From positions 186,001-250,000 of the IMG/VR virus record IMGVR_UViG_3300035180_001778: a stretch of 64,000 nucleotides of DNA; one strand, given 5' to 3'. The notes beneath the pieces were generated by a model. It ran no database searches, was not told where the DNA came from, and saw only the letters and a program-made list of their open reading frames with translations. A program made the position numbers and the translations under genes. Positions 110 to 21,558 of this stretch are shown in pieces; position 1 is the stretch's first letter; each line of letters begins with the position of its first letter.

Positions 110-430
110 TCACCATGCCGGCGGAGGCTTGAACTTCCGTAGCTTGTCCGCCAGAACTTCAGCGGAGCGAAATGCTTGACCGATTTGATGGTCAAGCTCG
201 TAGAGAACATCGCGGGTATCCTGAACCTGACGGTCGCCCGGACCAGGGTATCCGCTGACACCCTGAAAGTCCTCCTTCAGAGCTTGAACGTGATCGTTCA
301 CATCACGAAGAGGGCGACGCAATTCGATGCGTTTCTTCACGAGAGCTTCAAGCTCTCCGGCAAGCTTGTCCGGAGACACAGCATCGGATGCTTGAAGAAA
401 TCGCGCACTGACACGATCTTCAATAGACAT
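110..430 (-). CDS. Small putative virion (internal head) protein with N-terminal RVSARF motif
   Basis: ATG at 430 directly follows the upstream stop. Starts MSIEDRVSARFLQAS, a motif shared with other head-module proteins. Confidence 0.55.
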   Translation of the reverse strand: MSIEDRVSARFLQASDAVSPDKLAGELEALVKKRIELRRPLRDVNDHVQALKEDFQGVSGYPGPGDRQVQDTRDVLYELDHQIGQAFRSAEVLADKLRKFKPPPAW

Positions 431-431
431 C

Positions 432-1862
432 TCAGTGCTTGTCCTTGACGACGTTCTTGTTCTTCTCCCACTGGTCGGCGGCCTTCTCGGCATCCTCATC
501 CGACATGCTGGGGTTGGCCTTCTGGAAGCCCTTCATGACGTCCTCGCGGGAGTTGGCCTGCTGAAAGATGGCGGACTGCATGGTCGCCGCATCCATCTGC
601 ATCGAGTCGGCGAGCACCTTCCGAAGGACGGACGCGAGCTGCGTCCGGCTCGGGTTCTTCTGCGTCGACAGGGTCGTTGCCGCCTGTTGGAAGAAGCGTG
701 AAGCCTTCTTCGAGATGTCCCCAGCCTGACGCTGGTTCCCCTCCAGGTGGGCGATGAGAGAGACGAGACGAGCCATCGGGACCTTGCCCGTGGCATCGGC
801 AATCTCTGCCATCTTGAGGAGTTCCGCAGCCGCTTCTTTCGTGTTCTTCATGATCGTGTGCCTTTCTTGGGGGTGGTAACTTGCTTGTCTCGGTCCTGCA
901 CAGGCCTCACCAACAGCCCGTGCGAGATCCACCACCTGATCTCCCACGTAACTCAAGATGTTTTCGACAACCGCCTGTTTACCCAGATTGCCTTCAATCT
1001 GGTCAAGCGCGTTCTCAATGTCGCGGATGGCTTTGGGGAGCTTATCTCGACGAGGATTGGGGCTTTCAAGTCCCTGGTTGAAAGCGTTACCCATCTCCCG
1101 GAATGTTGCCGAGCCTGCCTGTTTTGTAGCCATTGTCGTGCTCTCATCTCTTGCGAAAAGCCCCAAAAACTTCGGGGGATTGATAGGCTTCAAGGGTTCA
1201 GGCCCATTGAACGGAGGCGGATCCTTGTTCAAGGCAGCCGTCATGCCCATCATCGACGCCAGGTTGTAACAGGCGTTGGCGAGCTTGTTGAGAAGAGGCT
1301 TGGGCTCTGCCTTCGGAGCGTTCTTCTTGGCGAATGCTTCGACTTCATTCAACACCGAGGTGCCTTCAGAGATCACCCCTCGGATGTCGACGTTGTCGGA
1401 GCCAAACCGACCCCCCGAATGGACCCCGCCCTCGTAAGAGGCGATCAGCTCCCGGAGAATCTTCTCCCCAACTTGAGCTTCCTTGTCTGTGGACCGGCGC
1501 TTCAAATAGGGCAGACGGATGTCCTGAAGAACACCTTCAAGTTCCTCCGCCTTTTCAGGCTTGAGATTCTGCTTGATTTCTTCGTAGTCGAGGCGAGCGG
1601 CAGCCATGGCCGATGCGTCCAAAGCCTTGTCGAGCTTGAACAGCATGTCGGGAATCCCGTGGATCAAATGCCCCGCCACCTCGAAGAGCTGATCCCGATT
1701 TTCGGCCTTGTCGATGAGGTCGACGGCTTCTTGAACGTACTTCTTGAGTTGTGCTGTACGGAGACGGGCGTCTCCCAGCTCTTCAATGAGGTACACGACG
1801 ACGCCGGAAGCGTTCTTTTCGTGTCCTGATCGACTCAGACAACCGCCGCTAGATTCTGTCAT
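432..1862 (-). CDS. Hypothetical virion/head-associated protein
   Basis: 476-aa ORF with GGAG upstream, several (K/R)xA motifs, located in the head module. Confidence 0.6.
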   Translation of the reverse strand: MTESSGGCLSRSGHEKNASGVVVYLIEELGDARLRTAQLKKYVQEAVDLIDKAENRDQLFEVAGHLIHGIPDMLFKLDKALDASAMAAARLDYEEIKQNLKPEKAEELEGVLQDIRLPYLKRRSTDKEAQVGEKILRELIASYEGGVHSGGRFGSDNVDIRGVISEGTSVLNEVEAFAKKNAPKAEPKPLLNKLANACYNLASMMGMTAALNKDPPPFNGPEPLKPINPPKFLGLFARDESTTMATKQAGSATFREMGNAFNQGLESPNPRRDKLPKAIRDIENALDQIEGNLGKQAVVENILSYVGDQVVDLARAVGEACAGPRQASYHPQERHTIMKNTKEAAAELLKMAEIADATGKVPMARLVSLIAHLEGNQRQAGDISKKASRFFQQAATTLSTQKNPSRTQLASVLRKVLADSMQMDAATMQSAIFQQANSREDVMKGFQKANPSMSDEDAEKAADQWEKNKNVVKDKH

Positions 1863-1908
1863 GAGCCATCTCCATCACCGGGAGACGGCTCACAAGAGAA
1901 CTATGGTT

Positions 1909-3138
1909 TCAGCCCTCGAAAGCCTGGGGGAACTCCGAGAGAAGCATCTGCTTCATGTCGTCGCCCTCGGCTGCGAAGACGGCCTTGAGGACATCGTGAC
2001 GATCCTCGTAGTCGGCCTGGAGGCGAGCGAGCTTCTTCCGGGGGGACACCGTGAAGTCGTAGTTGTCGGGGAAGTCCGCGCAGAACTGCTTGGCAACCAT
2101 CCGACGAACAGCCGCGGGGGCTTCCTTGACCGACACAGCCGGCGAAGGGTTGAGCGAAGCGACCACCCGAGTGGGGGCTCCCGAAGCTTCGGCCGAGAAA
2201 TGGACATCCTTCCGGGGACCGTTGGTGGTCCTGAAAGTCATCCCATCCTGGGTGAGAACCGAGGAGCGAGCCGGGGCCTGATCATATCCCGACATGTCAG
2301 CCGTCTCGGTCCCGCCGCCCGTGAAGAGGCTGGCGGTGATCCCCTCACGAGTCTCCGACCCACGGTTCTGAACGCGGCCCACGACACGCGAACCGCCGTT
2401 GTCCAGCATCGTCGGCTGGGAAGGACGGGGTTCCGAGACGTACTGCGAACGACGCATCTCGATCTGCGCGAGATACTCATCCCTCTGTCGAGGACTCATG
2501 CGAGCCAAGTACTCCTCTTCGGAGATACCCTCTCCCGGAGCGATCTGTCCCACGTTGTTCGCGTGATGCAGAAGACCACCGATGTTGTTGCCCGTGAGGT
2601 GAGCCCTGTTGAGGGCGTGCCGGTTTGCTTCATCTCCAGAGGGAGTCTGGAAACCAGAGCGAACCTCGACGCCGTCTTGCGGCTCGATGATGACCTGCCC
2701 CGTCACCCGCTGGCCGGGGACATACCCATTGTTGCGATCCCGAATCGAGTTCGCGTGGGCCGTGACGTTCCCCACCTCACGCTCATCGACATCTTCGCTC
2801 GTGGCCCGTGCGAAGTTCGACTGGTTCGGCCGTAGGGGGTTGCCACCATCCGCCGCGTGCTTGACCTGTATGTTCGCCGAACGAGGACGCTCCGACGTCG
2901 TGTCGAACTCGTCGTAGCTCGCCGCACGGATGAGCCAGCCCGCCTTGAATGCCCCTCGGAGCTGCGGCATCGGGTAGCGGCCCCCATTCACTTCCGCCGT
3001 GGTCCCATCGAACAGGACGTCCGTTCCCTTCGAGAGGGTCAAGGGCTGCCCGTTGCCGATGTTGCCGAGCGTGAAGCCCCGGGTCGTGATGAAGTGCTGG
3101 AGTTCGCCGTGCCGAAATGCAATCTGTTCCGATGCCAT
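1909..3138 (-). CDS. Hypothetical protein (head module)
   Basis: 409-aa ORF with an AGGAGA Shine-Dalgarno before the ATG. Confidence 0.65.
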   Translation of the reverse strand: MASEQIAFRHGELQHFITTRGFTLGNIGNGQPLTLSKGTDVLFDGTTAEVNGGRYPMPQLRGAFKAGWLIRAASYDEFDTTSERPRSANIQVKHAADGGNPLRPNQSNFARATSEDVDEREVGNVTAHANSIRDRNNGYVPGQRVTGQVIIEPQDGVEVRSGFQTPSGDEANRHALNRAHLTGNNIGGLLHHANNVGQIAPGEGISEEEYLARMSPRQRDEYLAQIEMRRSQYVSEPRPSQPTMLDNGGSRVVGRVQNRGSETREGITASLFTGGGTETADMSGYDQAPARSSVLTQDGMTFRTTNGPRKDVHFSAEASGAPTRVVASLNPSPAVSVKEAPAAVRRMVAKQFCADFPDNYDFTVSPRKKLARLQADYEDRHDVLKAVFAAEGDDMKQMLLSEFPQAFEG

Positions 3139-3212
3139 GTGTCCGCTCTCCTGAAGAAGATGTAGGTCCCCATCAAGAGCAAACGGATAAGTGTACTACC
3201 GCGTCCGAGAGG

Positions 3213-3240: not shown

Positions 3241-3247
3241 TAGAGGC

Positions 3248-4468: not shown

Positions 4469-5350
4469 CTAGAAGCGCTGAACCACGACGCGGGTGAGAG
4501 CCTTCGGGTTGAAGGCGCCGATGCCCACGTTCTCGAAGCACGAGAAGCCGATCGTGCGTGCCTTGGGATCGTCGGCCGAGAGGACCGTCAGCTCCGTGCG
4601 GACCGGGAAGCGACCGAAGTTCTCGGGTTCCGCGCAGATGTAGACGAACCCGACGGGGACGAGCCTCGACGTGATGATCTGCGCGCCCCAGAGGACGGCC
4701 TGGAGGCCGGTCTTGAGGAGGGTGGCCTGGCTCTCGATGTCCAGGATGTCACGGCCGAACTTGCGGATGTCCGCGTAGTCGACCGCGTTCATGTAGATCC
4801 GGGCAACCCGGAGGTCGTGACGCTCGATCTCGGCGAACGCGTCCGCGAGGACGGCCGGAGAGATGGGAGCCACCACCGCGACGTCAGGGTTCGACTGCCC
4901 GGGGAGGGTGTCGAAGCCGGAGACGGCGATCGAGTCGAGAACCGTGAAGACGCGCTCGTCTTCCGCGGCCTGGATCTGGGCCTTCGCGAGGTCCTGCGAA
5001 CGCTCGATGAGGTCGAAGCGACGCTCCTTGATCTGCGTGAGCGGGATCTCGGGGTTCGAGGCGATCTCGAACAGCGGGAAGATGACCCGACGCGGCTTCT
5101 GGATCGCGAGGATGTTCTGACCCTCTTCGCCGACCACGAAGGCCGTGACGTCGGGATCCTTGTCGTAGATGGGCAGCGCTCCATCCGGTAGCTGCTCGAC
5201 GAGGAAGGTCTTGCGACCGACCGCGGTGTAGTCACGACGCAGCCGAAGGGGCTGGATCATCGATGCAGCGAGCTTTGCACGGCCGGCGGCCGTCTTGATG
5301 TACTCGCTGATGATTTGCTGCTTCAGCTCGTTGGAAACCTGGTTGTTCAT
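4469..5350 (-). CDS. Major capsid protein (HK97-fold, jumbo-phage type)
   Basis: GRAKLAASMIQPLRLRRDY...GRKTFLVEQLPDGALPIYDKD pattern; follows protease, scaffold and decoration genes; strong codon bias; GAGGA Shine-Dalgarno. Confidence 0.85.
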   Translation of the reverse strand: MNNQVSNELKQQIISEYIKTAAGRAKLAASMIQPLRLRRDYTAVGRKTFLVEQLPDGALPIYDKDPDVTAFVVGEEGQNILAIQKPRRVIFPLFEIASNPEIPLTQIKERRFDLIERSQDLAKAQIQAAEDERVFTVLDSIAVSGFDTLPGQSNPDVAVVAPISPAVLADAFAEIERHDLRVARIYMNAVDYADIRKFGRDILDIESQATLLKTGLQAVLWGAQIITSRLVPVGFVYICAEPENFGRFPVRTELTVLSADDPKARTIGFSCFENVGIGAFNPKALTRVVVQRF

Positions 5351-6113: not shown

Positions 6114-7370
6114 TCACTTCATGTTGAAGGCGTCGCGAACATCGGGAGCCGAGGGCCAGAGGGCCGAGAGCTTGTCGATGTCGTTGCCAGAGCGATTGCC
6201 CGAGCCAGCCACCCCGCCGCCGACCCGCGAGACACCGCCCGTGGGACGAGTCCCGACCGTGCGAGTCGAAGCCGTGCGGCCCATGCCAGCCTGCTTCTGC
6301 TGTTGCGCGCCCTGCTGAGCCTGCTGAGCCTGCTCCGCGTCCTGCGACTCCTGAGTTGCGAAGAGGGTCTTGAGGACGTCGTCCTCCGGACCGAGCTGCA
6401 TCTCCCCGCCATCGCCGAGGTCCATCGGAGGAGCGTCCAGCTCAATGTCCGATTCAGACATGTCGCCGCCGCCCATCCCGCCGCCCATGAGGTCGTCGAG
6501 GAGAGCGTCATCCGACTGCTGTTGCATCGGCATCTGCTGTTGCGAGACCTGCTGCTGTTGCGGCATCTGCTGCGACTGCTGCATCTGGGGCATCTGCTGC
6601 TGAGCCTGTTGCTGCTGCGGCATCTGCTGATCGTTCGCGCGAAGGACACCCGCCTGCTTGAGAGCAGCGGTGACAGCCGCCTGGACAACCTGCATGATGT
6701 CCGGAGACATCGCGGGAGCCTGGGTGGTCTGCGTGGCCGCGGGCGCAGCGACACTGGTCGATGAGGCCCTCGCCATGTCGACAGGAGCCGGCATGGCGAG
6801 GGCCTCATCGAGAGCCAGCTTGGCTCCAGCGAGGTCGCCAGCCTGGAAGGCCTTCTGAGCGCGGAGCTGAAGGGCAGCCTGCTTCTGCTGAGCCTTCTCC
6901 TTGTCCTGATCGTCCTGCGACTGACCCTGCTGAGCGAGACGCTCAGAGAGGCTGGCGTAGGTCGCGATGAGGGCCGCGTCCGGCACATGCATCAGATTGA
7001 CCGCCTGATCCTCGATGGCCAACTCGGGAGCCGTGTTGCCGAGCATCATTCGAGCGAGCTTGACGGTGAAATCTGCCTTCTTCATGTAGAACTTTTCAGA
7101 CGCAGCCGTCTTCTCAGGGTGGTTGTAGGTTTCGGGGCGCTTCTCCGGCATGCCGATCTCGTCACGCTTGGTCTGCCCACCCGAGTACTCCTTCTCCCAC
7201 TCATTGGGGGAGTGAATGTCCTCCGCCCACGAAGACGGATCTCCGTTGGTGTACTTGTCCGCCGAAGGCTGTTGGCTGAGGTGGTCCTGATTCATGGACC
7301 GGGGGTCCTCTGCCGTCCGCGACGACCCCTGCTTGATCTGATCTCGGTTCCAGGTGGTGCGTGTACGCAT
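6114..7370 (-). CDS. Putative scaffolding protein (Gln-rich)
   Basis: Lies between the protease and capsid genes; low-complexity Q/M/P tracts; many KQA/RTA motifs. Confidence 0.6.
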   Translation of the reverse strand: MRTRTTWNRDQIKQGSSRTAEDPRSMNQDHLSQQPSADKYTNGDPSSWAEDIHSPNEWEKEYSGGQTKRDEIGMPEKRPETYNHPEKTAASEKFYMKKADFTVKLARMMLGNTAPELAIEDQAVNLMHVPDAALIATYASLSERLAQQGQSQDDQDKEKAQQKQAALQLRAQKAFQAGDLAGAKLALDEALAMPAPVDMARASSTSVAAPAATQTTQAPAMSPDIMQVVQAAVTAALKQAGVLRANDQQMPQQQQAQQQMPQMQQSQQMPQQQQVSQQQMPMQQQSDDALLDDLMGGGMGGGDMSESDIELDAPPMDLGDGGEMQLGPEDDVLKTLFATQESQDAEQAQQAQQGAQQQKQAGMGRTASTRTVGTRPTGGVSRVGGGVAGSGNRSGNDIDKLSALWPSAPDVRDAFNMK

Positions 7371-7459: not shown

Positions 7460-8947
7460 TCACGCACCCAACGAGAAGAGTTGACCCTTGACCAAGAGTG
7501 CCTTCTTCTCGTCCTCGGAGGGCTCACGTCCGAGGGCATGACAGCAAGCCGTCATGTATTGCGTGACATCACGGTAGCGGGACGTCCCCCCAACCGCGAC
7601 CACGGCCCGATAGATCCGGCCTTCCCCTGCCATCATGGTTCGCTTGCTTGCGAGGTCCACAATGCGGGAAACAGCCAGGATTTCACGTCCGCTGAGCCTT
7701 TTTGAAGCTTGCACAGCACCCCAACCACCCGTCTTGAGGAGGATGAGACCCAAAAGGGTTTGCCGTGCAGACCTACCACCCCCAACAGTCGCCACCAAGG
7801 AACGAGCCACCTCTTTCCAGACGGGATTCCGGAGAGCGGACTTGATGAGGGTATCGTTGTCGTTCGCGTCCCCAATCGGGGAATCGCTCTTGGCCATATC
7901 CCCACGCACCTTCTCCAGAGCCTTCTCCTGGAGAGTTGCGGCAAGGTCATCGACGGCCTTGTCGAAGGGAGCCTTCTCCGGGGCCTTGGGGGCGGGAGTG
8001 GGAGGCTTGGTGACATCCTCCTTTTCCTGAGAATCGTCACCCCCAAATTGAGCTTTCCGAATGAGGCTGTAGGCAGCCTTCTGGAAGAGATCCGGATTTG
8101 CCACCCGAGTACCCCCAGCGAATGCCGCCTGAATCTGACCCCCATAAGTGGCAATCTCTTCGGGGGATAGGATGCTGCGAAGGACGGCGCCCGTGAAAGC
8201 TGGGTTTGCAACCCAGCTCGCCTCGATGAATTTGACACTCCCGGGCTCGTCTGCGATGTGCCCGCACAGCTCTGCGATCCGACGTTTGTTGCCGAAGTCG
8301 TCAACCCACTCGTTGCCCTTGGCGTAGCGAATGTCGGGACAGAGCTGCGTCTCGTCGTAGGCGACGTTGCCGCACTTCGTGCAGACGGTGAACTCGACCT
8401 GGCACCCCATCGAGAGGGTCTGAAGCTGGCCGCTCGTGATGGCCGAGATGAGGGGGCGGTGCTTCCGATCCGTGGCCACGAGGATGTCCACATAGATGGA
8501 GTCCCCGATATCCCGAGCCGCAGCGTCGATGATCTTCCCGCGAGACATCTCTGGGATCTGAATGTGCTCGACGTAGTTCTCCCCGCCAATGAACGTACGG
8601 AAGCACGACAGAAGGAGCTTCCGCTCCCAGGCATCGTGGTTGTTGTTGATGTACTTCGACGTCTTGGGGGCGATCAGCCAGTCCTTGTACTTGCGGGTGA
8701 TCGGGAAGCCCGCGACAACCTGTTCCCCAAGCTCTGCCGGGCTCTCTTCCGTGTCGACCGAGGCGATGATCGTACAGTGGGAGAGCATGAAGCTCGAAGG
8801 GTCATACTTCTGGAAGACGACCTTGGCAGCGGCACGATCAGCGAAGGGGTTCCCCTTCATCTGACTCTTGCTCTTGACTTCATCCCAGCCCGCGAACTTG
8901 ATGTCCGGCTTGACGATGGCTGCGTTTGCGTAGCGTAGGAAGGCCAT
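7460..8947 (-). CDS. Prohead maturation protease
   Basis: NNNHDAW, YVEH, TLSMGC, CTKCGN and FIEASWVANPAF motifs typical of large-phage head proteases. Confidence 0.75.
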   Translation of the reverse strand: MAFLRYANAAIVKPDIKFAGWDEVKSKSQMKGNPFADRAAAKVVFQKYDPSSFMLSHCTIIASVDTEESPAELGEQVVAGFPITRKYKDWLIAPKTSKYINNNHDAWERKLLLSCFRTFIGGENYVEHIQIPEMSRGKIIDAAARDIGDSIYVDILVATDRKHRPLISAITSGQLQTLSMGCQVEFTVCTKCGNVAYDETQLCPDIRYAKGNEWVDDFGNKRRIAELCGHIADEPGSVKFIEASWVANPAFTGAVLRSILSPEEIATYGGQIQAAFAGGTRVANPDLFQKAAYSLIRKAQFGGDDSQEKEDVTKPPTPAPKAPEKAPFDKAVDDLAATLQEKALEKVRGDMAKSDSPIGDANDNDTLIKSALRNPVWKEVARSLVATVGGGRSARQTLLGLILLKTGGWGAVQASKRLSGREILAVSRIVDLASKRTMMAGEGRIYRAVVAVGGTSRYRDVTQYMTACCHALGREPSEDEKKALLVKGQLFSLGA

Positions 8948-9493
8948 TCAGGGGCTCTTTTCTGAGTAGGAGCTGTGTAGCTTGGTCAACTCCCTTGACA
9001 GAGTTGAGACGACATTCGTGTCTCCACCAAGAGACACGAATGTCGAACCCAGAGGCAAGAGAATCCGATTTAGCTCTTGGAAGACGTTGTCGATATCCCC
9101 ATGGTGAGCTGCTTTTGCAGCATGCTCAAAACAAGAGGCAACTGCCTCCAGGCTATCCTTCAGGTCCCGCTCAAGGTGCTTGCCATCCTTCGATTCGGCT
9201 TGGAAACGAGCAAAGACCCGAGTCGCCATGACCCCCGTCATATACTCGTACTTCATGAAGTCGGCCTTGGAGAGAGCCAGTTTCTTGGCTTCCAAGAGGG
9301 TGGGCTCTACCCCCAGCTTGTCTCCAGCCTGTTGGACATGGAACAGACCGTCCTTCGCGTAGAAGTCGATCACGATCCCATGGTCAAACGGGTAGCGGAT
9401 ACCATTACGACCGGCGAGGTTGTAAGAGTTCCCCTCTCCATCCCCCAAGTCCTTCAGGTCCTTGTGGAACCACCCTGCATCGACAGCACTCAC
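8948..9493 (-). CDS. Hypothetical virion protein (internal RVFARF motif)
   Basis: Coupled ORF in the head operon. Confidence 0.55.
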   Translation of the reverse strand: MSAVDAGWFHKDLKDLGDGEGNSYNLAGRNGIRYPFDHGIVIDFYAKDGLFHVQQAGDKLGVEPTLLEAKKLALSKADFMKYEYMTGVMATRVFARFQAESKDGKHLERDLKDSLEAVASCFEHAAKAAHHGDIDNVFQELNRILLPLGSTFVSLGGDTNVVSTLSRELTKLHSSYSEKSP

Positions 9494-9756
9494 TTGGAGC
9501 CCTCCCCCTCAAAGGGAGCCTCACGGTCCAAGGCCATGACATGCTCAGCACGTTCGAGCTTCTGACGGTAGTCTCGGATCTTGGATCGAAGGCCATCGGC
9601 CCTACCGAGTTGTCCCGAGGCCTCAGCTTTTGAAGCCTGTCTTTGGGCCTTCTCAATAGCGCTCAACAGATCCTTGATCTGTTGAGCGAGGTCAGCAGAT
9701 TCGGAGGCTGCCTTCTCTTGGTAGAAGCGCTGGAGAACACGAGCACCTGTCACCAT
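9490..9756 (-). CDS. Small coiled-coil virion protein (RVLQRF motif)
   Basis: Overlaps neighbouring starts and stops; N-terminal motif. Confidence 0.55.
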   Translation of the reverse strand: MVTGARVLQRFYQEKAASESADLAQQIKDLLSAIEKAQRQASKAEASGQLGRADGLRSKIRDYRQKLERAEHVMALDREAPFEGEGSK

Positions 9757-11340: not shown

Positions 11341-14310
11341 TCAGCCGAGGTTCTTGATGGTCTGGAGAATCGGCCGGATGTGGGGACGCATCGCCGGGTT
11401 CTTCGTGGCGAAGTCGATGATCGACGCCTTCAGAGCACGGTAGGAGGCAGCCTGCTTCTGCTGTTCCTGACCCTGGTCCTTGTCGTCCTTCTTCTCGTCC
11501 TTCTTGTCGTCCCCCTTGCCCTTCATGTGCTCAAGGAACTGGGGAGGCACCTGTCCACCCTGCTTCTGCTGTTCCTGGGACTGCTGAGCCTTCTCCTGTT
11601 GCTCTTCCTGAGCAACCTTGTCCGCGAGGACGATGAAGTCGTACGCGGCGGAGGGGTTGGTGTATGCCATTTCGGCGGCCTGCTTGCGGATTACGGCGGA
11701 TGCGCTCATGGGTTCTTCTCCTGTAGCAACATAAACGGATCCGTGAGCAGCGGCTTCATGGACCGTCAACAGCGTTTCGTCTTCGGACTTCCCAGCCAAC
11801 CGAGCGAGAAGGGAATTGTACGTCTTGTGGTCGAAACCCGCAGAGTACCTCCCGTCTTCGAGCGTTTGAATGGCGAGGTCAAGAGCGGCCCGTAGCTGGG
11901 TGTCCCGCTCAATTCCCTCCACAGACTTCGACAACACAGGGGCCTTGAGCCACTCCCTTGCCGATTTGAGGACCTTCGTGTAGTCCTTCTCCCCAAGGTC
12001 ACGATCGTGGACTTGATTCCACTTCGTATAGGGGGCGAAGCCCTCATGCCCCTTCGGGTAGGGGGCAACCCCCCAATAGACAGCCTGGCGGTTCTGAGGA
12101 CCCATCGACTTGCACCCTGAATAAGAAGAAAACGAGGCTGTCACCTGGCGATTTTGCTCGTCCCAGAGCCGTTCCCGCTCCTCTTCCTGGTCCTCACCCC
12201 CCAAACCATACCGGACCGGCTTCGCCGGGGGCTCAGGGAGTTCAGGTTCCGGAGGCAGCTCAGGAGCTTCAGGCAAGTCCAGATCCGGCGGAGGCTTCGG
12301 AGCCACGGGGGGCTTCGGCGGTTCCATGCCCTCTGTGGGGGACTCGCGATAGTCCCCCACAGAGGGCATGGCTTCTTGCACGAGCTTCTGGTACTTGACC
12401 TTCTCCTTGACGTACTTTCGGTACTCCTTGTCGAACGCCTTTGCCTGCTCCTTGTACTCGTCGATGGTCCCCTCATGCTTCGAGCGGAGCTTCTCGATGA
12501 TCTTGTCGTGCTTGTCGATGACCTTCTGAACAACCTTCTCGTACCGATCCATGGTCCGCGTCACGAGCTTCTCATGACGGGCAGTCTCAGAATCGAAGAG
12601 CTGGCGCTCGTACTTGTCGACATGGTTCCGAACGAAGGGGTACTTCTCCGGGTTGAGAGTCTGAACATGCTTCAGAATTCGGGTCCGAAATGCCCCCGCC
12701 GGATCCTGAGTAATAGCCGTTGGCGGGTATAGCCGAGAGCGATCCATGAGGAACCGGCTGCCGTCGACCACCCCACGAGCAATGTCCGTAGGCCCCTGAT
12801 GCTCCGAGATGTGCTCAGGAGAGGAGGGGTCTAGAAAACGAGCACGAGCCGTCTGGTAGTCGCGAGCCTGGAAGTAGGAGACCGCAAGACGCTCGGCTGC
12901 CGGGTTGCTCTTCGTGAACTCCAGGACGTTCTTGATCGTCCCGGGGGCGATCTTCTCATCCTTGCCTTCCGTCAGAACCTTCTGGAATACCTTCGCGGCC
13001 AGCTCCTTCGACTGGGCGTTGTCCTTCTCAGGGTCGACCTGCTCGCCTTCCTTCGGCGGCTTCTGCTGTAGAAGGAAGGCAGAGAGGAAGTCGGCCAACG
13101 CCGGGGGAGCCCCCAACGTGCGGGTGAGCGACCGGGTCACCTGGTCATGCGCAGCAAGGCTCAAAGCCACCGTTCGATTTCGGTGTTGAGCCCCAGCTTC
13201 AGCCTGCTCTTCAGGTGAAAGCTCGGTGAACGGGATCTCATTTCCAGCCTGGTCCTTCCCTGTCTTCGGAAGAGGGACCTTCGTGGGATCCGGCTGAAAC
13301 CAATGTTGGGCCTTCCCAACCAGCTTCTCCGCCGCCTTTGCCCCCATGTCACCCGAGCGGGCAGCGTGGTAGGTCGCAAGGATATCCGCCACATCATCCG
13401 GATGGAGGTTCGCATCGAGCAAGCCCTCCCGCATGGCACCGCGGGGAAGGTTTTCGAGAATGGCTGACTTCGCAGCCATTTGCTCCCACTCTTCCGCTTG
13501 ACGCCTCTTCGGCTCAGGGGTCTTGCCCTTTTCCTTCGGAGCCTCTTCAGGGGCCTTCTCAGGCTCTTTCTCGTCTTCCTTGGGCTCCTCGTTGCCCTCA
13601 TCAGGTTCCGGAGGCGTACCAGGGTCTTCCCCCTTCGGAGCCTCGTCAGGGACCTTCTCAGCTTCCGGGGCCTTGGGACTCTCGGGGTCTTTGGGCGCTT
13701 CTTGAGTCTTGGGGGGGTTCTTCTTCCCCTGGTTCAGGACCTTGACGAGCTGCCCAAGCGTCTTGACGCCTTCAGGAAGAGGGCGCCCCCGCATCATGAT
13801 CTCGGCGGGCAGATTGGGAGTGCTCTTCGCCACGTACCCGCCACCTTGCGAGGTCGGGTTGAGCAGGTCCTTGAAGACAGACGCCAGCTCGGGATCCGCC
13901 TTCGAGGCGTCCCATAGCTTCTTGCCCTGTGCGTAGGATTCGTGATCCTCGGGCGCCCATGCCGGTCCCGAGTCCCCCTCTTCGGGCAAGGAGTACTCGT
14001 CGGAGCGTTGCTTCAACGTCTCCGGCTTGATGTAGGTGGTCTCCCCTGTCTCCTTGCGGACAACCTTGACTTTCCCGTTGTCCTTCGCGGCTTCGAGGAA
14101 GCGATCGAGGATACGGCCCCCCAAAGAACCCTTGTAGTTGAGTGACAAGTCCTTGTCGGACTCCTTCAAGTCAGGGTCGGCTTCAGGACGCATGTCTTCC
14201 CGACGACGATCCCGCCGAGGAGGCTTGATCTTCGGGGCGGGACGGACAAGGCGCTCAGCCTCTTCCTCTTCCCGCTCATGCGTATCCTTCGTCGCCCAAT
14301 GCAACATCAC
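11341..14310 (-). CDS. Large multi-segment virion protein with Pro/Glu-rich linkers; possible internal starts
   Basis: 989-aa ORF; the internal ATG at 11709 has an AGGAGA Shine-Dalgarno. Confidence 0.65.
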   Translation of the reverse strand: MMLHWATKDTHEREEEEAERLVRPAPKIKPPRRDRRREDMRPEADPDLKESDKDLSLNYKGSLGGRILDRFLEAAKDNGKVKVVRKETGETTYIKPETLKQRSDEYSLPEEGDSGPAWAPEDHESYAQGKKLWDASKADPELASVFKDLLNPTSQGGGYVAKSTPNLPAEIMMRGRPLPEGVKTLGQLVKVLNQGKKNPPKTQEAPKDPESPKAPEAEKVPDEAPKGEDPGTPPEPDEGNEEPKEDEKEPEKAPEEAPKEKGKTPEPKRRQAEEWEQMAAKSAILENLPRGAMREGLLDANLHPDDVADILATYHAARSGDMGAKAAEKLVGKAQHWFQPDPTKVPLPKTGKDQAGNEIPFTELSPEEQAEAGAQHRNRTVALSLAAHDQVTRSLTRTLGAPPALADFLSAFLLQQKPPKEGEQVDPEKDNAQSKELAAKVFQKVLTEGKDEKIAPGTIKNVLEFTKSNPAAERLAVSYFQARDYQTARARFLDPSSPEHISEHQGPTDIARGVVDGSRFLMDRSRLYPPTAITQDPAGAFRTRILKHVQTLNPEKYPFVRNHVDKYERQLFDSETARHEKLVTRTMDRYEKVVQKVIDKHDKIIEKLRSKHEGTIDEYKEQAKAFDKEYRKYVKEKVKYQKLVQEAMPSVGDYRESPTEGMEPPKPPVAPKPPPDLDLPEAPELPPEPELPEPPAKPVRYGLGGEDQEEERERLWDEQNRQVTASFSSYSGCKSMGPQNRQAVYWGVAPYPKGHEGFAPYTKWNQVHDRDLGEKDYTKVLKSAREWLKAPVLSKSVEGIERDTQLRAALDLAIQTLEDGRYSAGFDHKTYNSLLARLAGKSEDETLLTVHEAAAHGSVYVATGEEPMSASAVIRKQAAEMAYTNPSAAYDFIVLADKVAQEEQQEKAQQSQEQQKQGGQVPPQFLEHMKGKGDDKKDEKKDDKDQGQEQQKQAASYRALKASIIDFATKNPAMRPHIRPILQTIKNLG

Positions 14311-14337: not shown

Positions 14338-16176
14338 TCAACCAAATCGATCCTCACCCTCAGCTTCAGGCGCAGCCGTCATCTTGAGCTTGAGGTAGGT
14401 GGCGATCTTCTCCGCGACGTCCGTCGAGTCCGCCAGCTTTTGACCCACCGCACCGTAGATGCCGCGCATGACCTCGTTGAAGGTCGCGTCGTTGGTGGTG
14501 AACATGTCCTTCTCGATCTTGAGCTTGGTGTCGTTCGGGTCGATGTTGAACATTTCCAGGATGACGTCGATCGAAATCGAGCCCTTTTGATAGAGGTTGA
14601 AGAGTGCGTCGTACGTGTCTTGGCTGTCCCGAAGCGGAAGGCGGGTGAACGACAGACGAGGGTAGAGCACGACCTCTTCGCCCCATTCGTCCTTCTCGAC
14701 GAAGCCCATGCGACGGGCAACAGGCTTGAATAGGTACTCCTCGACGTACTCCTGAAGGATCTCCCGAAGGAACAAGTAGCGGGTGTTGATGACCTCCAGC
14801 TTGAGGCGGTCCCCCGAGTAGAGAGACTCCCCCGAGAGGAGCGATTCCGTGACGCCAAGCCCCGCATGGAGCTGGCGATCCGTGATCTCGTACTCTCCCG
14901 AGAGGTCCAAGAGACGGTCCTTCGACCCCATCTCTTCCCAGTGGATCTCGTAGTTGGCCACGATCGAGTAGTCGGGGTCGACCAACGAAAGGTCGACCTG
15001 CTCGCGGAGCTGCTCGCAATCGTCATCCGAGATGTCTTCGGCCCACACGATACGCTTCGGGGTCATCGCCCGGCTGGCGATCTGCGTCTGAGCCTGGCGG
15101 AGCTTCTCTCGGTAGTAGAGGGTCCGGAGGCAGCGATCCAGGATGCTCGCCCCCAGCTCTTCCCCTGCTTGTTTGCGCCCCGTCAGGATGAACGCAAAGC
15201 TCCCCTCATCAGGGTCCGTTCCAAGAGGGATGAGGCGCCCATCCTCGATGTGCTCCCGAACCTCATCCGGAATGTCCGACGCCATTTCCTCAGCGTCAGG
15301 GTCACCCATGCGAGCTTGCTCGACGATGGCCCGATCACGATCCGACGGGATCAGCTCCACACGAAAGCGATCAGAGAACGACCACGCCGTGACTCGGATC
15401 TGATCGACGGGGACGACGATCAGCCGGTCCCACCCCTTGTAGTTCTTCTGGTAGTGCGCGAGTTCCTGCTCTTCACGATCAGGCCGCTCGACCCAGATGT
15501 CTTCCTTCGTTTCGATCGGGTTGCCTTCGTCATCAATCGAGCTTCGAAGCTCGACTTGACGGTCATACCCAATTTCAGACGGCACCTGGACATCGGAGTC
15601 CTCAGCGAAGATGCAGCATGTCCCGTCGAGCCAGTAGTGGTGGACAGCCGTGATGAGCCGCTGGAAGAGCTTCACCTTCTTGCACATCTTCTCGAAGCGC
15701 GAGAGGATGTACTTGCCGTAGTCCTCGGGGCTCTTGAAACCCTTCGGGGTCGTGGTGGGCTTCGGAGTCGCCAGACGAACCTTCGAGAGGGGAAGCTCCG
15801 TGTGCAGGTCGATTGCCTGCCCCACGATCGGATCCGAGTTGTAGAAGTGCTTGTATATCTCCCGCTTCTCTTGGATCGACTGAGGAAGCTCCAGGAAGTC
15901 CGTGGACATCTGGACGGAGAAAGTCTGCTGTGCCCCAGCTTGGACCGTGTTGGAGCCCCCGATGTTGTCCACCGAGAACGCGCCATTCATCGCCGCGGTG
16001 CGGTTGTTTTGACGAAGGGCACGTTGCTGCCGCCGGGCTTCACGCTCGTTGGGGGTGAGGGGGGTTCGACCCCCACCTTCACCCTGCGCAATATGCGGAG
16101 TCGTATGCCGTCGATTTTGCGACGGCATCGAAGTGAAGCGAGTGGTGGCGTTGGAAATTCTACCGCGGGCGGGCAT
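14338..16176 (-). CDS. Portal protein
   Basis: FYNSDPIVGQAIDLHTELPLS and GASILDRC motifs; about 610 aa; located between terminase and protease. Confidence 0.8.
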   Translation of the reverse strand: MPARGRISNATTRFTSMPSQNRRHTTPHIAQGEGGGRTPLTPNEREARRQQRALRQNNRTAAMNGAFSVDNIGGSNTVQAGAQQTFSVQMSTDFLELPQSIQEKREIYKHFYNSDPIVGQAIDLHTELPLSKVRLATPKPTTTPKGFKSPEDYGKYILSRFEKMCKKVKLFQRLITAVHHYWLDGTCCIFAEDSDVQVPSEIGYDRQVELRSSIDDEGNPIETKEDIWVERPDREEQELAHYQKNYKGWDRLIVVPVDQIRVTAWSFSDRFRVELIPSDRDRAIVEQARMGDPDAEEMASDIPDEVREHIEDGRLIPLGTDPDEGSFAFILTGRKQAGEELGASILDRCLRTLYYREKLRQAQTQIASRAMTPKRIVWAEDISDDDCEQLREQVDLSLVDPDYSIVANYEIHWEEMGSKDRLLDLSGEYEITDRQLHAGLGVTESLLSGESLYSGDRLKLEVINTRYLFLREILQEYVEEYLFKPVARRMGFVEKDEWGEEVVLYPRLSFTRLPLRDSQDTYDALFNLYQKGSISIDVILEMFNIDPNDTKLKIEKDMFTTNDATFNEVMRGIYGAVGQKLADSTDVAEKIATYLKLKMTAAPEAEGEDRFG

Positions 16177-17125: not shown

Positions 17126-17127
17126 GG

Positions 17128-17643: not shown

Positions 17644-17649
17644 AGCCCC

Positions 17650-18425: not shown

Positions 18426-20462
18426 CTACCGGCCTCCTCGCGACCGAGTCCCCATGCCGCTGCCCCTCGGCACGACCCTCTGAGAGAACCCTCCATGGTT
18501 GCGGGCTCGGGCCATCTGGTAGCGAGCGAGAGACATCCCCATCCCCGTCTGACCTCGGCTGTCCGAAGGCCCAAGAGCAAGCCGGGTATTCGTCATGCGC
18601 TGAGCAGACAGCCACACAGCTCGAACGAAGGCGTCCGCCATGTCGTCGTGCTGGCCAACCGTCTCGGAAGCCGAGACGATGACCAGGTTCCGAGAGACCT
18701 GTTCAGCCTGGAGGCCCAGCAACTCTTGAATGAAAGGAGAGTGCCGGTTCCCGACCTTCGCCTTGGGCCAGTCATAGAGACGGAGCTTCCGATCGAACAT
18801 CATGAGCTTCGTGTTCTGGTAAATCTGGCTCGACAAGTCGCGCTTGAAGTGCTCCGACTTGAACTGCTTGAGGCCCTTCTTGTTGAGGGCTTGCTCCAGC
18901 GGGATACCGTTCCAACGGTCGAAGATACCAGCGGTGATGAAGAACCTCTTGGTCAGGTTCTCGATCCAGTTCCCGATCTCCTCGAAGTCCAGACGCTCGA
19001 CGTCCTTCAGGCCGCGGGCATAGGCCATCGAAGGGGACCCCCCAAGATGGTCATTCGTCTCACGCCAGTCCACGCCAGCATACCACGACTCGTGATAGTC
19101 CAGAACGATCTCGTTGTTCTCGACGTGAGTGATGAAAATCGACGTCCCGTCCCCCATGAGCCCGATGTCGATCCCCATCTGGTGAGGTTCGCGAGGACGG
19201 CCCGACTCCTTGGGCCGTAGGTTGGCGTCGATGCAGTCCAGGAGATCCACCTCCCGCTCGATCCAACCACGGACGCGGTCAGAGAACTGCGCCCCGTGCT
19301 CGGTCATGAAGACCAGAGGATCGGCGTGGTACTTCTGCCGGTAGTAGTCGGCGGGGATCGTGGGATTGATCTCCCAGGTGGGAGCCTGAATCGCCAAGAT
19401 GTTCTCGGAGCTGGGACCCCCGCTCATTGCTTGGTGGTACAGCTCGTAGAACTTCCCCTGCTTGTTGAGGGGCGACGAAATGGCGATGATCCGAGACTCG
19501 ACGGGGCCAATCGGCTTCGTCGTATCGTTGGGGTCCTTTGGAGAGAAGGCGGCGGTCGAGGGAGTGACGGCGTCGTAGATGTCCTTCGCGCTCGACTGCC
19601 CCGTGTCCTTGAAGTGGGCCATCTCGTCCATGATGACGACGGCGTTACCCGCTCCACGAAGACCCTTCGCGATACAGGACTTGAAGGTGACCCTCATGGT
19701 CGCCTTGCCGTTGAACGAGGTGAACTTGCCGTTCTCGTGCCGGCTCGTCTGCCCGTACTTCTCGATGTCGTGTGGGGTCCTGAACTGAATGTGGCTCAGG
19801 GTGTTGTTGGCGATGTAGGGCTTGAAGTACTCGCAACGGCTCAAGTGGGAGGTCACCTCGTTGAAGAGGAGACCTGCCTGGTCCTTGTCCGTCGCGATGC
19901 TGACGATCTGAATCCGGTTACCGCCGGGGAGCCCGTAGTATCCCTGGGGGTGATGAAGGTTCAGAAGCCGGTAGACTTCGTAGCTCGCGAAGATGCCCGA
20001 CAGCGTCGTCTTGCCCCCACGACGGCCGATGGCCAGAAGCAGCTCGCGACGCATGTGATCCTGAACGCCGATGTTACAGCGGCCGTCTTCGTACAGGAAC
20101 TTGAGGTACTCCACTTCCGTGAGAAAGTGCGTTTGCACCGTGTTGAACATGTCCGTGACCTTGATGGTCTTGACCTTGCTCTCCAACGGAAGATGGTAGT
20201 AGAGCTTGACGATGAACTTCTGGACGGGATAGAGAGTGATCCCCAACCCCCAGGGCTGTTCGATGTAGTCGAGGATGCTGAAGATACGAGCCAGGGCGGG
20301 CCGTACTTGAGCCGGGGGCTCTCCCTCGACGACCTCGATTTGGGAGAGGGCCTCCTTTTCGAGGTTCTCGACAACCGTTGTCTTTGCGTGCTGTCCGGCT
20401 GTCCGGACGAGCGCTGCAAGGCTCGTCCCGGCGTTCTCAGCTTTGGTTTTGGGGGAGGCCAT
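18426..20462 (-). CDS. terL: Terminase large subunit
   Basis: Walker A GRRGGKT, Walker B VIMDE, motif III ISSP, nuclease motifs GIDIG and HDDMADA. Confidence 0.92.
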   Translation of the reverse strand: MASPKTKAENAGTSLAALVRTAGQHAKTTVVENLEKEALSQIEVVEGEPPAQVRPALARIFSILDYIEQPWGLGITLYPVQKFIVKLYYHLPLESKVKTIKVTDMFNTVQTHFLTEVEYLKFLYEDGRCNIGVQDHMRRELLLAIGRRGGKTTLSGIFASYEVYRLLNLHHPQGYYGLPGGNRIQIVSIATDKDQAGLLFNEVTSHLSRCEYFKPYIANNTLSHIQFRTPHDIEKYGQTSRHENGKFTSFNGKATMRVTFKSCIAKGLRGAGNAVVIMDEMAHFKDTGQSSAKDIYDAVTPSTAAFSPKDPNDTTKPIGPVESRIIAISSPLNKQGKFYELYHQAMSGGPSSENILAIQAPTWEINPTIPADYYRQKYHADPLVFMTEHGAQFSDRVRGWIEREVDLLDCIDANLRPKESGRPREPHQMGIDIGLMGDGTSIFITHVENNEIVLDYHESWYAGVDWRETNDHLGGSPSMAYARGLKDVERLDFEEIGNWIENLTKRFFITAGIFDRWNGIPLEQALNKKGLKQFKSEHFKRDLSSQIYQNTKLMMFDRKLRLYDWPKAKVGNRHSPFIQELLGLQAEQVSRNLVIVSASETVGQHDDMADAFVRAVWLSAQRMTNTRLALGPSDSRGQTGMGMSLARYQMARARNHGGFSQRVVPRGSGMGTRSRGGR

Positions 20463-20465
20463 GGG

Positions 20466-21155
20466 TCACCGTGCCACGCTTGAAGCGCGGTCCTCCCAAC
20501 CATCCATCTTCGTTGCGAAGCGGTTGAAGAAGAGATCGATCTGCTCCGGCGAGAGGATCTCCTCAGCGATCTCCTGTAGAGTCGAAACCCACAGTTGGAA
20601 GACCTTCTGGAACCGCTCCCCGCGGAAGTCGACGACGTCCCCGCCGAGCTTCTTCATCTCCAGCTCGATGTTGGCGATCTTCGTGAGAGCTTCGATCCGG
20701 CGGCTGGAGACTTGTGCCGTGTCCTTGCCGTACTTCTCGGTCTCACTCCGCTGGAAGGCCAGTGCAGCCTGCTCCTTCGCGATCTCGGAGCGAATGACAC
20801 GGAGCATGACCATCGCCTCGCCATGCCCACTGGCGGCAATGACGACGGGGTCCGTGGCGATGTACTTCCGCTTCTCCTCGCTCATCTCGGCGTGGTATTC
20901 GAGGTCCGAGATGTCCGGCTTCCGATTAACGGTGCGCGGACGACCTCGGCTCCTCTTGACCTTGATGATGCCGTCCTTGTCGGCGAGCGAGTGCAGAGGG
21001 AGCTTCCGCACGTTGTCCGGTAGGACCTCGGCTTCTTCTTCCTCCGCATCATCCGGCTCGACCGGATCCGCCCCCGGATCCGTCTCGTCATAGGCCTCAT
21101 CAACGGCGTCTTCGAGCGTCGCGTCCTTGATGGTTTCGTCGGTTGCAGTTGCCAT
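20466..21155 (-). CDS. Probable terminase small subunit
   Basis: Directly upstream of terL; AT-hook-like RGRPR; helical. Confidence 0.5.
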   Translation of the reverse strand: MATATDETIKDATLEDAVDEAYDETDPGADPVEPDDAEEEEAEVLPDNVRKLPLHSLADKDGIIKVKRSRGRPRTVNRKPDISDLEYHAEMSEEKRKYIATDPVVIAASGHGEAMVMLRVIRSEIAKEQAALAFQRSETEKYGKDTAQVSSRRIEALTKIANIELEMKKLGGDVVDFRGERFQKVFQLWVSTLQEIAEEILSPEQIDLFFNRFATKMDGWEDRASSVAR

Positions 21156-21156
21156 T

Positions 21157-21558
21157 TTACTTCAGGTTCTTCCCGGCTGGAGGGGTGTCCCCGCCGCCTT
21201 CGGTCCGAATGAGGTACTGAGAGAGGTTCTTGACGGTGTCCCAACCCTTGTCCTTGTGGACCTGAGTACGAAGCACCTTGTCCTGGTCTTCGCCGGTCTC
21301 AGCGAAGTTGAGGACGCTCATGCTGCGAGGCGAAGGAGAAAAGACATCCGAAGGCCGGATGTCCCGTCGATCCGGCTCCACAGCATCATCGTGGCTGTCA
21401 TCCGTCCTCGCGTTGTCCTTTTGAATCTTCTCGTCAATCCCCCGTGTACGGTTGATGGGGGTCGCAAGCTCGCGATCCCGCTTCCGTTGCCCGGCGGGTT
21501 GATCCGCCTGAGCAAGGAAGCGAGCCACGACCCGCCTGACAAGAGCAGGGCCAATCAC
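21157..21558 (-). CDS. Small virion protein (RVVARF motif)
   Basis: Starts MIGPALVRRVVARFLAQA. Confidence 0.6.
   Translation of the reverse strand: MIGPALVRRVVARFLAQADQPAGQRKRDRELATPINRTRGIDEKIQKDNARTDDSHDDAVEPDRRDIRPSDVFSPSPRSMSVLNFAETGEDQDKVLRTQVHKDKGWDTVKNLSQYLIRTEGGGDTPPAGKNLK

What the first reader, a model, noticed from the sequence alone, without database searches (positions are those of the whole stretch)
110..21558. Shared RV-x-x-RF tag on five otherwise unrelated head-module proteins
Seen: RVSARFLQA (110-430), RVFARFQA (8948-9493), RVLQRFYQ (9490-9756), RILDRFLEA (11341-14310) and RVVARFLA (21157-21558), usually followed by an Ala site. Known: T4 internal proteins use a short cleavable capsid-targeting sequence. 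Inference: a prohead-targeting signal for cargo loading, possibly usable for protein packaging.
Basis: partly seen in the sequence, partly recalled or inferred. Interest (0 to 1): 0.65.

Follow-up and report, generated by a model that had tools for sequence, protein, structure and literature searches.

The report
Shared peptide tag on megaphage head proteins
A huge uncultivated phage puts the same short helical peptide (consensus R-V-x-A-R-F-L) on at least 13 otherwise unrelated proteins, many of them in its head-assembly gene cluster. This most likely marks them for loading into the capsid, as phage T4 does with its internal proteins, but no experiment has tested that.

Summary
All five motifs are real and lie at the stated coordinates. 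They belong to a larger set. The window is part of a 350-kb phage G-like megaphage, and a genome-wide scan finds 13 strong copies, all in coding frames of the minus strand (shuffles give about 2).

- **Position:** eight copies lie 4-14 residues after the start codon.
- **Level of selection:** third codon positions are random, so selection acts on the peptide, not on a DNA repeat.
- **Carriers:** they are unrelated outside the tag, apart from three weak HExxH paralogs.
- **Conservation:** the tag recurs in related IMG/VR megaphages. It is conserved in about 50 homologs of the 133-aa protein and in orthologs of the post-portal protein. It is absent from homologs of the 106-aa protein, so it is modular.
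- **Location:** five of the 13 copies lie in the 21-kb head module. Other carriers are a topoisomerase IB and zincin-like enzymes.

A T4-like prohead-targeting signal is the best reading (about 0.5) but is unproven. No cleavage consensus follows the tag, and the one complex prediction gave no answer. The main rival is docking to a phage-encoded ClpX-like unfoldase, whose gene sits beside tagged genes in relatives.

The parts
110..430 (-). 106-aa carrier with the tag at residues 6-11 (tag codons 398-415). The start ATG lies directly after the stop of the upstream gene.
   Evidence: The upstream in-frame stretch is not coding in this frame. No Pfam or PHROG family matches. Homologs of the body in L042, L044 and L034 lack the tag.
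8948..9493 (-). 181-aa carrier directly upstream of the protease gene, with an internal tag at residues 92-97 (tag codons 9203-9220). An in-frame ATG with a G-rich Shine-Dalgarno-like stretch lies 3 codons before the tag.
   Evidence: The upstream half scores as coding in the same frame. Homologs were found only in L007 and L009.
9490..9756 (-). 88-aa carrier with the tag at residues 6-11 (tag codons 9724-9741).
   Evidence: Homologs were found only in L007 and L009; in L009 the tag differs only at an x position.
11341..14310 (-). 989-aa post-portal protein with the tag at residues 66-71 (tag codons 14098-14115). A conserved, charged pre-sequence of about 65 residues, ending in N-Y-K-x-x-G-G-S, precedes the tag. 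The rest is mostly low-complexity K/E/P-rich sequence.
   Evidence: Orthologs in more than 20 relatives keep the pre-sequence and a tag or tag variant ([RK]-[VI]-x-x-[RK]-[FYW]).
21157..21558 (-). 133-aa carrier beside the terminase genes, with the tag at residues 9-14 (tag codons 21517-21534). Its GTG start overlaps the stop of the upstream gene.
   Evidence: It has 73 homologs, and the N-terminal tag is conserved in the 50 that were aligned. AF2 places a helix at residues 4-18, though the model has low confidence.
7460..8947 (-). Prohead protease-like protein (495 aa) with a helical C-terminal extension of about 200 residues. It is a candidate processor or receptor for the tag.
   Evidence: phrog_18299 head maturation protease, E=1.5e-8, and phrog_2774, E=1.4e-20. 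It is 38% identical to Tunturi_5 gp331, which is annotated as head maturation protease. The AF2 model is confident only for residues ~370-495, which are all helical.
6114..7370 (-). Scaffold-like protein (418 aa, Gln-rich) lying between the protease and the decoration and capsid genes. It is a candidate receptor.
   Evidence: The assignment rests on position and composition. It is 43-64% identical in relatives. No family hit. The scaffold role is an inference.
4469..5350 (-). HK97-fold major capsid protein. It is 90-96% identical across relatives whose other head proteins are 43-81% identical. It is a candidate receptor.
   Evidence: phrog_2522, E=6e-52. PDB 6wkk, phage G gp27, E=1.5e-62. Conservation table.
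14338..16176 (-). Portal protein.
   Evidence: phrog_16240, E=3.4e-21.
18426..20462 (-). Large terminase subunit.
   Evidence: phrog_2, E=2.1e-19.

Best explanation
The motif is a short linear peptide of about 13 residues that forms an amphipathic helix. Its extended consensus is [LI]-A-x-R-V-[AV]-A-R-F-[LQM]-x-A. It acts as a portable docking tag.

The tag is usually placed 4-14 residues after the start codon, and sometimes in an internal or C-terminal linker. I propose that it binds one conserved receptor inside the assembling prohead, either the scaffold core or the inner face of the capsid protein. That would recruit a changeable set of cargo proteins into the head: small head-module proteins, the post-portal protein, a topoisomerase IB and zincin-like enzymes. 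Part of this cargo would later be ejected with the DNA.

**Shown:** the tag exists, is selected at the protein level, is modular, is conserved across a clade, and is enriched in the head module.

**Inferred:** that it binds a prohead component, that its carriers are packaged, and that they are ejected.
For: - **Enrichment:** 13 strong copies, all in coding frames, against about 2 expected.
- **Peptide-level selection:** the first and second codon positions of R, V, R and F are fixed, while third positions are 21-32% identical pairwise (F third position 62%).
- **Unrelated carriers:** they share nothing outside the tag apart from weak HExxH paralogy.
- **Position:** 8 of 13 copies lie 4-14 residues after a start codon.
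- **Location:** 5 of 13 lie in the 21-kb module that holds terminase, portal, protease, scaffold and capsid genes.
- **Conservation:** the post-portal protein keeps the tag in more than 20 relatives. The 133-aa protein beside the terminase keeps it in about 50 homologs. In relatives the tag is found 40 times on the coding strand and 5 times on the other. Most of the pattern hits fetched from three other genomes also lie at N-termini.
- **Modularity:** homologs of the 106-aa body lack the tag.
- **Synteny:** in LR745208.1 the topoisomerase IB gene lies in the head module right after the portal gene and ends with a tag-like peptide.
- **Helical periodicity:** hydrophobic residues are enriched at positions -3, 2, 6 and 7, and AF2 puts a helix over the tag.
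- **Precedents:** T4 CTS and P1 DarB N-terminal signals (PMC5694885, PMC9024508).
Against: - There are no virion proteome data for this phage or any close relative.
- No conserved cleavage site follows the tag, unlike the T4 CTS.
- Five tags are internal.
- Six strong copies lie at 50-77 kb among non-structural genes (Dam-like methylase, ClpX-like unfoldase, phosphoesterase), and one lies among large unannotated genes near 139 kb.
- The folded trio of capsid protein, scaffold fragment and tag peptide gave no answer.
- The receptor is unknown.
Confidence: 0.5

Rival explanations
1. The tag docks proteins onto the phage-encoded ClpX-like unfoldase, through its N-terminal zinc-binding domain. Tagged proteins would then be unfolded, remodelled or degraded. 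This resembles how bacterial adaptors and substrates tether to ClpX by short terminal peptides.
For: - G000 encodes a ClpX-like protein with a CxxC..CxxC N-terminus (genome 71326-72576; phrog_4339, E=7.8e-91).
- The same gene is present in the seven clade relatives tested and in phage G. It is absent from LR745208.1 and Tunturi_5, which also lack an excess of tags.
- In G001, G006 and G007, genes just downstream of ClpX (directly adjacent in G001 and G007) begin with tags. In G000, tagged genes lie 1.8-4 kb downstream.
- SspB and RssB dock to the ClpX zinc-binding domain by a short C-terminal motif (PMC7226468). From my memory, SspB's motif ends L-R-V-V-K, which resembles part of the tag.
Against: - This reading does not explain the head-module enrichment, or the conserved tags on the post-portal protein and the protein beside the terminase.
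- ClpX is a clade-wide trait and is also present in G003, which has no RVxARF copy.
- The co-occurrence rests on very few independent lineages.
- No ClpP was found in G000.
- The neighbours of phage G ClpX carry no G-type tag.
- In most copies the conserved Leu is at position -3, not directly before the Arg as in SspB.
Confidence: 0.15
2. The tag is a generic amphipathic helix with some other shared role. It might let carriers self-associate into a common bundle, bind DNA or membrane, or bind a host hub protein. None of these involves capsid loading.
For: - The tag is a basic amphipathic helix.
- It can sit at N-terminal, internal or C-terminal positions.
- Its carriers include enzymes encoded outside the structural modules.
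Against: - The two Arg, the Val and the aromatic residue are strictly conserved in unrelated proteins and across diverged genomes. This points to one specific partner rather than a general physical property.
- No hydrophobic stretch follows the tag.
- The tag is enriched in the head module.
Confidence: 0.2
3. The pattern is due to chance, to composition, to a DNA-level repeat, or to common descent of the carriers (paralogous N-termini).
For: - The genome is GC-rich and Arg-rich.
- Three carriers are weak HExxH paralogs.
Against: - Shuffles give 1.9 copies against 12 observed.
- Third codon positions are random.
- There is no similarity outside the tag among the other ten carriers.
- The same body occurs with and without the tag.
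- The strand bias is 40 to 5 in relatives.
Confidence: 0.03

Closest known systems
Phage T4 capsid targeting sequence (CTS) of the internal proteins IPI-III and Alt
   Same: - Both are short peptides shared by otherwise unrelated small internal proteins and an enzyme.
- Both are mostly N-terminal.
- In both cases the genome also encodes a prohead protease and a scaffold core.
- The CTS is portable in T4 (PMC5694885, citing Mullaney and Black 1996).
   Different: - There is no sequence similarity to the T4 CTS.
- No Glu-type cleavage site is conserved after the tag.
- The tag also occurs at internal and C-terminal positions.
- Packaging has not been shown.
- The capsid lineage is phage G-like rather than T4-like.
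Phage P1 DarB N-terminal packaging signal
   Same: An N-terminal stretch of fewer than 30 residues is enough to send a large enzyme, or a reporter, into the capsid (PMC9024508).
   Different: In P1 the signal is described for one protein. Here one consensus is shared by 13 or more proteins and across many genomes.
Encapsulin cargo-loading (targeting) peptides
   Same: A short, conserved, position-tolerant peptide on diverse cargo docks onto the inner face of an HK97-fold shell protein (my own knowledge). Here the capsid protein is by far the most conserved head protein, as would be expected of a shared receptor.
   Different: Encapsulins have no portal, scaffold or protease, and their peptides are mostly C-terminal with a different consensus. 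Binding to the capsid protein was not supported or refuted here.
Long N-terminal propeptides of phiKZ-like / SPN3US head proteins
   Same: This is also a giant phage with many internal and ejection proteins. The identical N-termini of SPN3US gp53 and gp54 were proposed to act like a CTS (PMC5694885).
   Different: Those propeptides are 80-130 residues long and end at an A/S/G-x-E cleavage site. Here the element is about 13 residues long and has no such site.
ClpX-docking peptides of SspB and RssB (XB region)
   Same: Both are short basic-hydrophobic peptides in a flexible terminal region, and the phage encodes a ClpX-like protein with a zinc-binding domain (PMC7226468).
   Different: The known XB peptides are C-terminal and shorter, and binding was not tested here.

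Membership tests
T4-type capsid targeting sequence | A short peptide shared by otherwise unrelated head-internal proteins, at the N-terminus | tested here: met
   There are 13 copies on unrelated proteins, 8 of them 4-14 residues after the start codon. Five copies are internal, so the feature is met for most carriers but not all.
T4-type capsid targeting sequence | The tag is removed by the prohead protease at a conserved site just after it | tested here: not met
   No conserved residue pattern beyond Ala enrichment is seen at positions 9-22 in 42 unique instances. A protease homolog is present. Only mass spectrometry can settle whether cleavage occurs.
T4-type capsid targeting sequence | Carriers are found inside proheads or virions, and the tag is sufficient to package a foreign protein | not testable with these tools
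   The phage is uncultivated and no proteome exists. This needs virion mass spectrometry and tag-reporter assays.
T4-type capsid targeting sequence | A prohead protease and a scaffold core are encoded in the same module | tested here: met
   Protease hits phrog_18299 and phrog_2774. A scaffold-like Gln-rich protein lies between the protease and capsid genes; its role is inferred from position and composition.
Encapsulin-type cargo-loading peptide | The peptide binds the inner surface of the HK97-fold shell protein | tested here: inconclusive
   The complex of capsid protein, scaffold fragment and tag peptide scored 0.12 against a mark of 0.34. The tool reports this as no answer.
ClpX docking or degron peptide | A cognate ClpX with an N-terminal zinc-binding domain is present | tested here: met
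   Genome 71326-72576: phrog_4339, E=7.8e-91, with a CxxC..CxxC N-terminus.
ClpX docking or degron peptide | The peptide binds ClpX, or its carriers are ClpX(P) substrates | not tested
No ClpP was found in G000.
Tat (twin-arginine) signal peptide | Consecutive Arg-Arg, then x-F-L-K, followed by a hydrophobic h-region and an A-x-A site | tested here: not met
   The two Arg are four residues apart, and the 20 residues after the tag are polar or charged in all 13 carriers.

The most novel reading that the evidence does not exclude
A clade of soil megaphages uses one portable, position-tolerant peptide of about 13 residues as a general address label for capsid cargo. The cargo set, which includes injected zincin proteases and a topoisomerase IB, turns over quickly while the label and its receptor stay fixed. 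The phage's own ClpX-like unfoldase reads the same label, either to deliver tagged proteins or to clear those that were not packaged. Phage G would have an analogous but different label. If so, the system is general to phage G-like megaphages and could be used to load foreign proteins into very large capsids.
Probability: 0.12. Interest if true: 0.85.

Novelty: new variant of a known kind. Interest (0 to 1): 0.62.

Why it matters
How giant phages fill their heads with dozens of internal and ejected proteins is poorly understood. The only well-defined address labels are the T4 CTS and the P1 DarB signal.

A conserved, sequence-defined label in an abundant clade of uncultivated megaphages would do three things:
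- It would let the injected protein arsenal be predicted from sequence alone.
- It would point to a conserved receptor in the prohead.
- It would offer a handle for packaging foreign proteins into very large capsids.

The conserved adjacency of tagged genes to a phage ClpX-like gene adds a second hypothesis that can be tested.

Tried and rejected
- **Complex prediction:** I folded the capsid protein, scaffold residues 85-205 and the first 36 residues of the 106-aa carrier. The score was 0.12 against a mark of 0.34, which the tool reports as no answer. It is neither support nor evidence against.
- **AF2 of the protease with 17 orthologs:** the protease domain came out below pLDDT 50, so I ran no fold search and the protease clan remains unassigned. 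A sequence search of the PDB found nothing for it.
- **AF2 of the 133-aa family:** confidence was low (mean pLDDT 60). I use it only for the helix over the tag.
- **Raw DNA-pattern counts for R-V-x-x-R-F in relatives:** these are barely above the reversed-pattern control, because all six frames are counted. Context had to be read locus by locus.
- **LR745208.1 and Tunturi_5:** neither shows an excess. LR745208.1 has one internal and one C-terminal tag-like peptide. Tunturi_5 shows none in the head region.
- **Pfam and PHROG searches:** the small carriers and the post-portal protein gave nothing.
- **Phage G proteome:** supplementary tables are not held, and the 2020 structure paper is not held. 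I therefore could not check whether the G-tagged proteins are virion proteins.
- **Internal translation starts:** ATG or TTG codons with Shine-Dalgarno-like sequences lie 3-8 codons before four of the five internal tags. The Met is not conserved in orthologs of the post-portal protein, so I treat this as unproven.
- I re-ran it with the seeds taken from coordinates.
Full report
**What the window is.** The window is bases 186001-250000 of a single 350,469-bp virus contig with 59.7% GC.
- Its major capsid protein (window 4469-5350, minus strand) matches phrog_2522.
- It matches the solved phage G capsid protein gp27 (6wkk, E=1.5e-62).
- It is 82% identical to the 485-kb uncultured phage LR745208.1, 48% to Tunturiibacter phage Tunturi_5 and 39% to Bacillus phage G.

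It holds the large terminase (18426-20462), the portal (14338-16176), a prohead protease-like protein (7460-8947), a Gln-rich scaffold-like protein (6114-7370), a decoration-like protein and the capsid protein.

**The observation.** A six-frame scan of the window for R-[VIL]-x-x-R-F gives nine hits.

A six-frame scan of the whole genome, followed by a position matrix built from the copies, separates 13 strong copies from the background. All 13 are on the minus strand, in long open frames.
- Eight lie outside the window, with motif ends at genome positions 51213, 51710, 54826, 67831, 69465, 76577, 98641 and 139303.
- In a crude gene set of 421 genes, the strict motif occurs 12 times. Within-protein shuffles give a mean of 1.9 and a maximum of 5 in 200.
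- Weaker variants with Lys for Arg or Tyr/Trp for Phe sit at the ends of neighbouring genes.

**Selection acts on the peptide.** Across the 13 copies, the first and second codon positions of the two Arg, the Val and the Phe are essentially fixed. The third positions of the first five codons are only 21-32% identical pairwise, which is what chance gives; that of the Phe codon, which has only two synonyms, is 62%. The motif is therefore not a DNA repeat or a regulatory site.

With the tag masked, an all-against-all BLAST of the carriers finds only weak similarity around the HExxH motif of three of them. The carriers are therefore not paralogs that share an inherited N-terminus.

**Position in the protein.** In eight carriers the tag begins 4-14 residues after a start codon, and the in-frame sequence further upstream is either closed by a stop or does not score as coding.

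In five carriers the upstream in-frame sequence does score as coding, so the tag is internal:
- window 8948-9493 (residue 92 of 181);
- window 11341-14310 (residue 66 of 989);
- the topoisomerase IB ORF;
- the ORFs containing genome positions 67831 and 98641.

In relatives the tag also occurs a few residues from a C-terminus (L027 and L049). In LR745208.1 a tag-like peptide ends the topoisomerase IB protein. The element is thus position-tolerant, with a strong preference for N-termini.

**Shape of the motif.** In 42 unique instances from this genome and its relatives, the unbiased flanking columns show Leu/Ile at position -3 (22 of 42), Ala at -2 (17 of 42) and Ala at +9 (15 of 42). Together with Val2, Phe6 and Leu7, this gives the i, i+4 spacing of an amphipathic helix, with both Arg on one side.

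AF2 on the 133-aa family places a helix over residues 4-18, though the model has low confidence. No further conserved pattern that could be a protease site appears within 14 residues after the tag.

**Conservation and modularity.** A capsid-protein search of IMG/VR returned 80 loci from a large clade whose capsid proteins are 90-100% identical to this one.
- In those loci the matrix finds the tag 40 times on the coding strand and 5 times on the other.
- Orthologs of the post-portal protein in more than 20 relatives share a charged pre-sequence of about 65 residues. A tag or tag variant follows it, sometimes two in tandem.
- The 133-aa protein beside the terminase has 73 homologs in the large protein collection. 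In the 50 I aligned, the N-terminal tag is conserved and its second Arg is at least 90% conserved. That search sees only proteins of 0.55-1.75 times the query length.
- Among the RVxxRF pattern hits fetched from three other genomes (G002, G004, G005), most lie 3-14 residues after a start codon.
- The small window carriers 8948-9493 and 9490-9756 have homologs only in L007 (100% identical throughout, probably the same phage) and the close relative L009.
- The body of 110-430 has homologs in L042, L044 and L034 that lack the tag.

The same tag thus sits on different bodies, and the same body occurs with and without the tag.

**Who carries it.** In the window:
- three small proteins of unknown family (88, 106 and 133 aa);
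- a 181-aa protein directly upstream of the protease gene;
- the 989-aa post-portal protein.

Outside the window:
- three zincin-like HExxH proteins (weak Pfam and Atlas leads to metallopeptidases);
- a protein with a eukaryotic/poxvirus-type topoisomerase IB core (PF01028, E=1.6e-25);
- four proteins with no family hit.

In LR745208.1 the topoisomerase IB gene lies in the head module directly after the portal gene.

Five of the 13 copies fall in the 21.4-kb head module, against about 0.8 expected. Six cluster at 50-77 kb among non-structural genes.

**Most likely mechanism.** I read the element as a docking label for the assembling prohead. The amphipathic helix would bind one conserved receptor in the scaffold core or on the inner face of the capsid protein, and so load a fast-changing cargo set, part of which is enzymes likely to be ejected with the DNA.
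- This follows the T4 CTS and P1 DarB precedents (PMC5694885, PMC9024508).
- It fits the head-module enrichment and the conserved tags on the post-portal and terminase-adjacent proteins.
- It fits the pattern of cargo turnover under a fixed label.
- The capsid protein is far more conserved (90-96%) than the portal (54-81%), protease (44-64%) or scaffold (43-64%). That makes it a natural fixed receptor, but this is only an inference.
- Binding, packaging and ejection are all unshown.

**The main rival.** The genome encodes a ClpX-like unfoldase with a zinc-binding N-terminus (genome 71326-72576).
- The gene is present in all seven clade relatives tested and in phage G. It is absent from LR745208.1 and Tunturi_5, which also lack an excess of tags.
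- In G001, G006 and G007, genes just downstream of ClpX begin with tags; they abut ClpX in G001 and G007, and two small ORFs intervene in G006. In this genome tagged genes lie 1.8-4 kb downstream.
- Bacterial adaptors dock to the ClpX zinc-binding domain through a short terminal peptide (PMC7226468).
- Against it, ClpX docking does not explain the head-module enrichment. The co-occurrence rests on few independent lineages. G003 has ClpX but no RVxARF copy. No ClpP was found here.

I give this rival 0.15. The two ideas could also be combined, which is the novel case.

**A parallel in phage G.** In the 40-kb head locus of phage G, 8 of 60 annotated proteins carry a different basic-hydrophobic peptide within their first 12 residues, matching [KR]-[LI]-[KI]-[KS]. 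About 1 would be expected. Seven of the eight are gp5 to gp20, between the packaging genes and the capsid gene. I wrote that pattern after seeing the data, so the enrichment is overstated. Still, it suggests that lineage-specific N-terminal labels on head-module proteins are a general habit of phage G-like megaphages. Because phage G can be grown, this is testable.

Noticed in passing
window 4469-5350 compared with the rest of the head module; loci L007-L086: The capsid protein is 90-96% identical across relatives whose portal (54-81%), protease (44-64%), scaffold (43-64%) and decoration protein (54-71%) have diverged far more. This is unusually strong constraint, or possibly exchange, on the shell protein alone.
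   Followed up: partly
genome 71326-72576 (L002:6326-7576, minus strand); L107, L108, L109: The phage encodes a ClpX-like unfoldase. It is conserved in all seven clade relatives tested and in phage G, and is absent from LR745208.1 and Tunturi_5. Tagged genes lie directly downstream of it in several relatives. In G002 and G005 the ClpX match is split inside an open frame of about 780 aa, which may reflect an intein or other insertion.
   Followed up: partly
L087 (phage G, NC_023719.1 3292-44134): Phage G gp5, gp9, gp10, gp12, gp13, gp17, gp20 and gp38 start with a shared basic-hydrophobic peptide of the form [KR]-[LI]-[KI]-[KS]. That is 8 of 60 proteins against about 1 expected, but I defined the pattern after seeing the data.
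   Followed up: partly
window 11341-11440 (C-terminus of the 989-aa protein); L005 18710-19114 and 26337-27392: A second shared peptide, roughly L-x-x-x-L-I-x-x-A-x-x-[ND]-P-x-[LM]-R-P-x-[LI]-x-P-[LI]-L, ends the window's post-portal protein. The same peptide begins two different proteins in LR745208.1. It is another short module that moves between head proteins.
   Followed up: partly
genome 67660-67830 (minus strand); L031 ~2615, L033 ~2597: In one G000 carrier, and in the post-portal proteins of L031 and L033, the tag is followed by a conserved stretch of about 30 residues containing H-P-x-A-D-P-x-x-H-x-V. Its function is unknown.
   Followed up: no
genome 51222-52985 (minus strand); L005 11558-13084: The phage encodes a topoisomerase IB core (PF01028, E=1.6e-25). 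In LR745208.1 the homologous core is preceded by an N-terminal extension absent from G000 (HAD-like by eye, not searched against families), and the gene sits right after the portal gene. The last ~45 residues of that protein align to residues 3-47 of the window's post-portal protein.
   Followed up: partly
window 16592-18171: Three tandem paralogous genes (171-215 aa) lie between the terminase and portal genes. The single homolog in LR745208.1 lies downstream of the capsid gene instead. No family hit.
   Followed up: no
window 10460-10900: An endonuclease VII gene (phrog_2633, E=1.6e-25) sits inside the head module. It is missing at this place in almost all relatives; only L007 and L023 have a match. 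It is probably a mobile nuclease insertion.
   Followed up: no
L017, L023, L032, L046 (protease orthologs): In four relatives the open frame containing the protease ortholog is 926-1034 aa, against about 495 aa elsewhere. This may be an in-frame upstream gene or an insertion. I did not examine it.
   Followed up: no
window 56624-63654: Five tRNA genes (Thr, Ser, Trp, Ser, Leu) lie on the minus strand.
   Followed up: no
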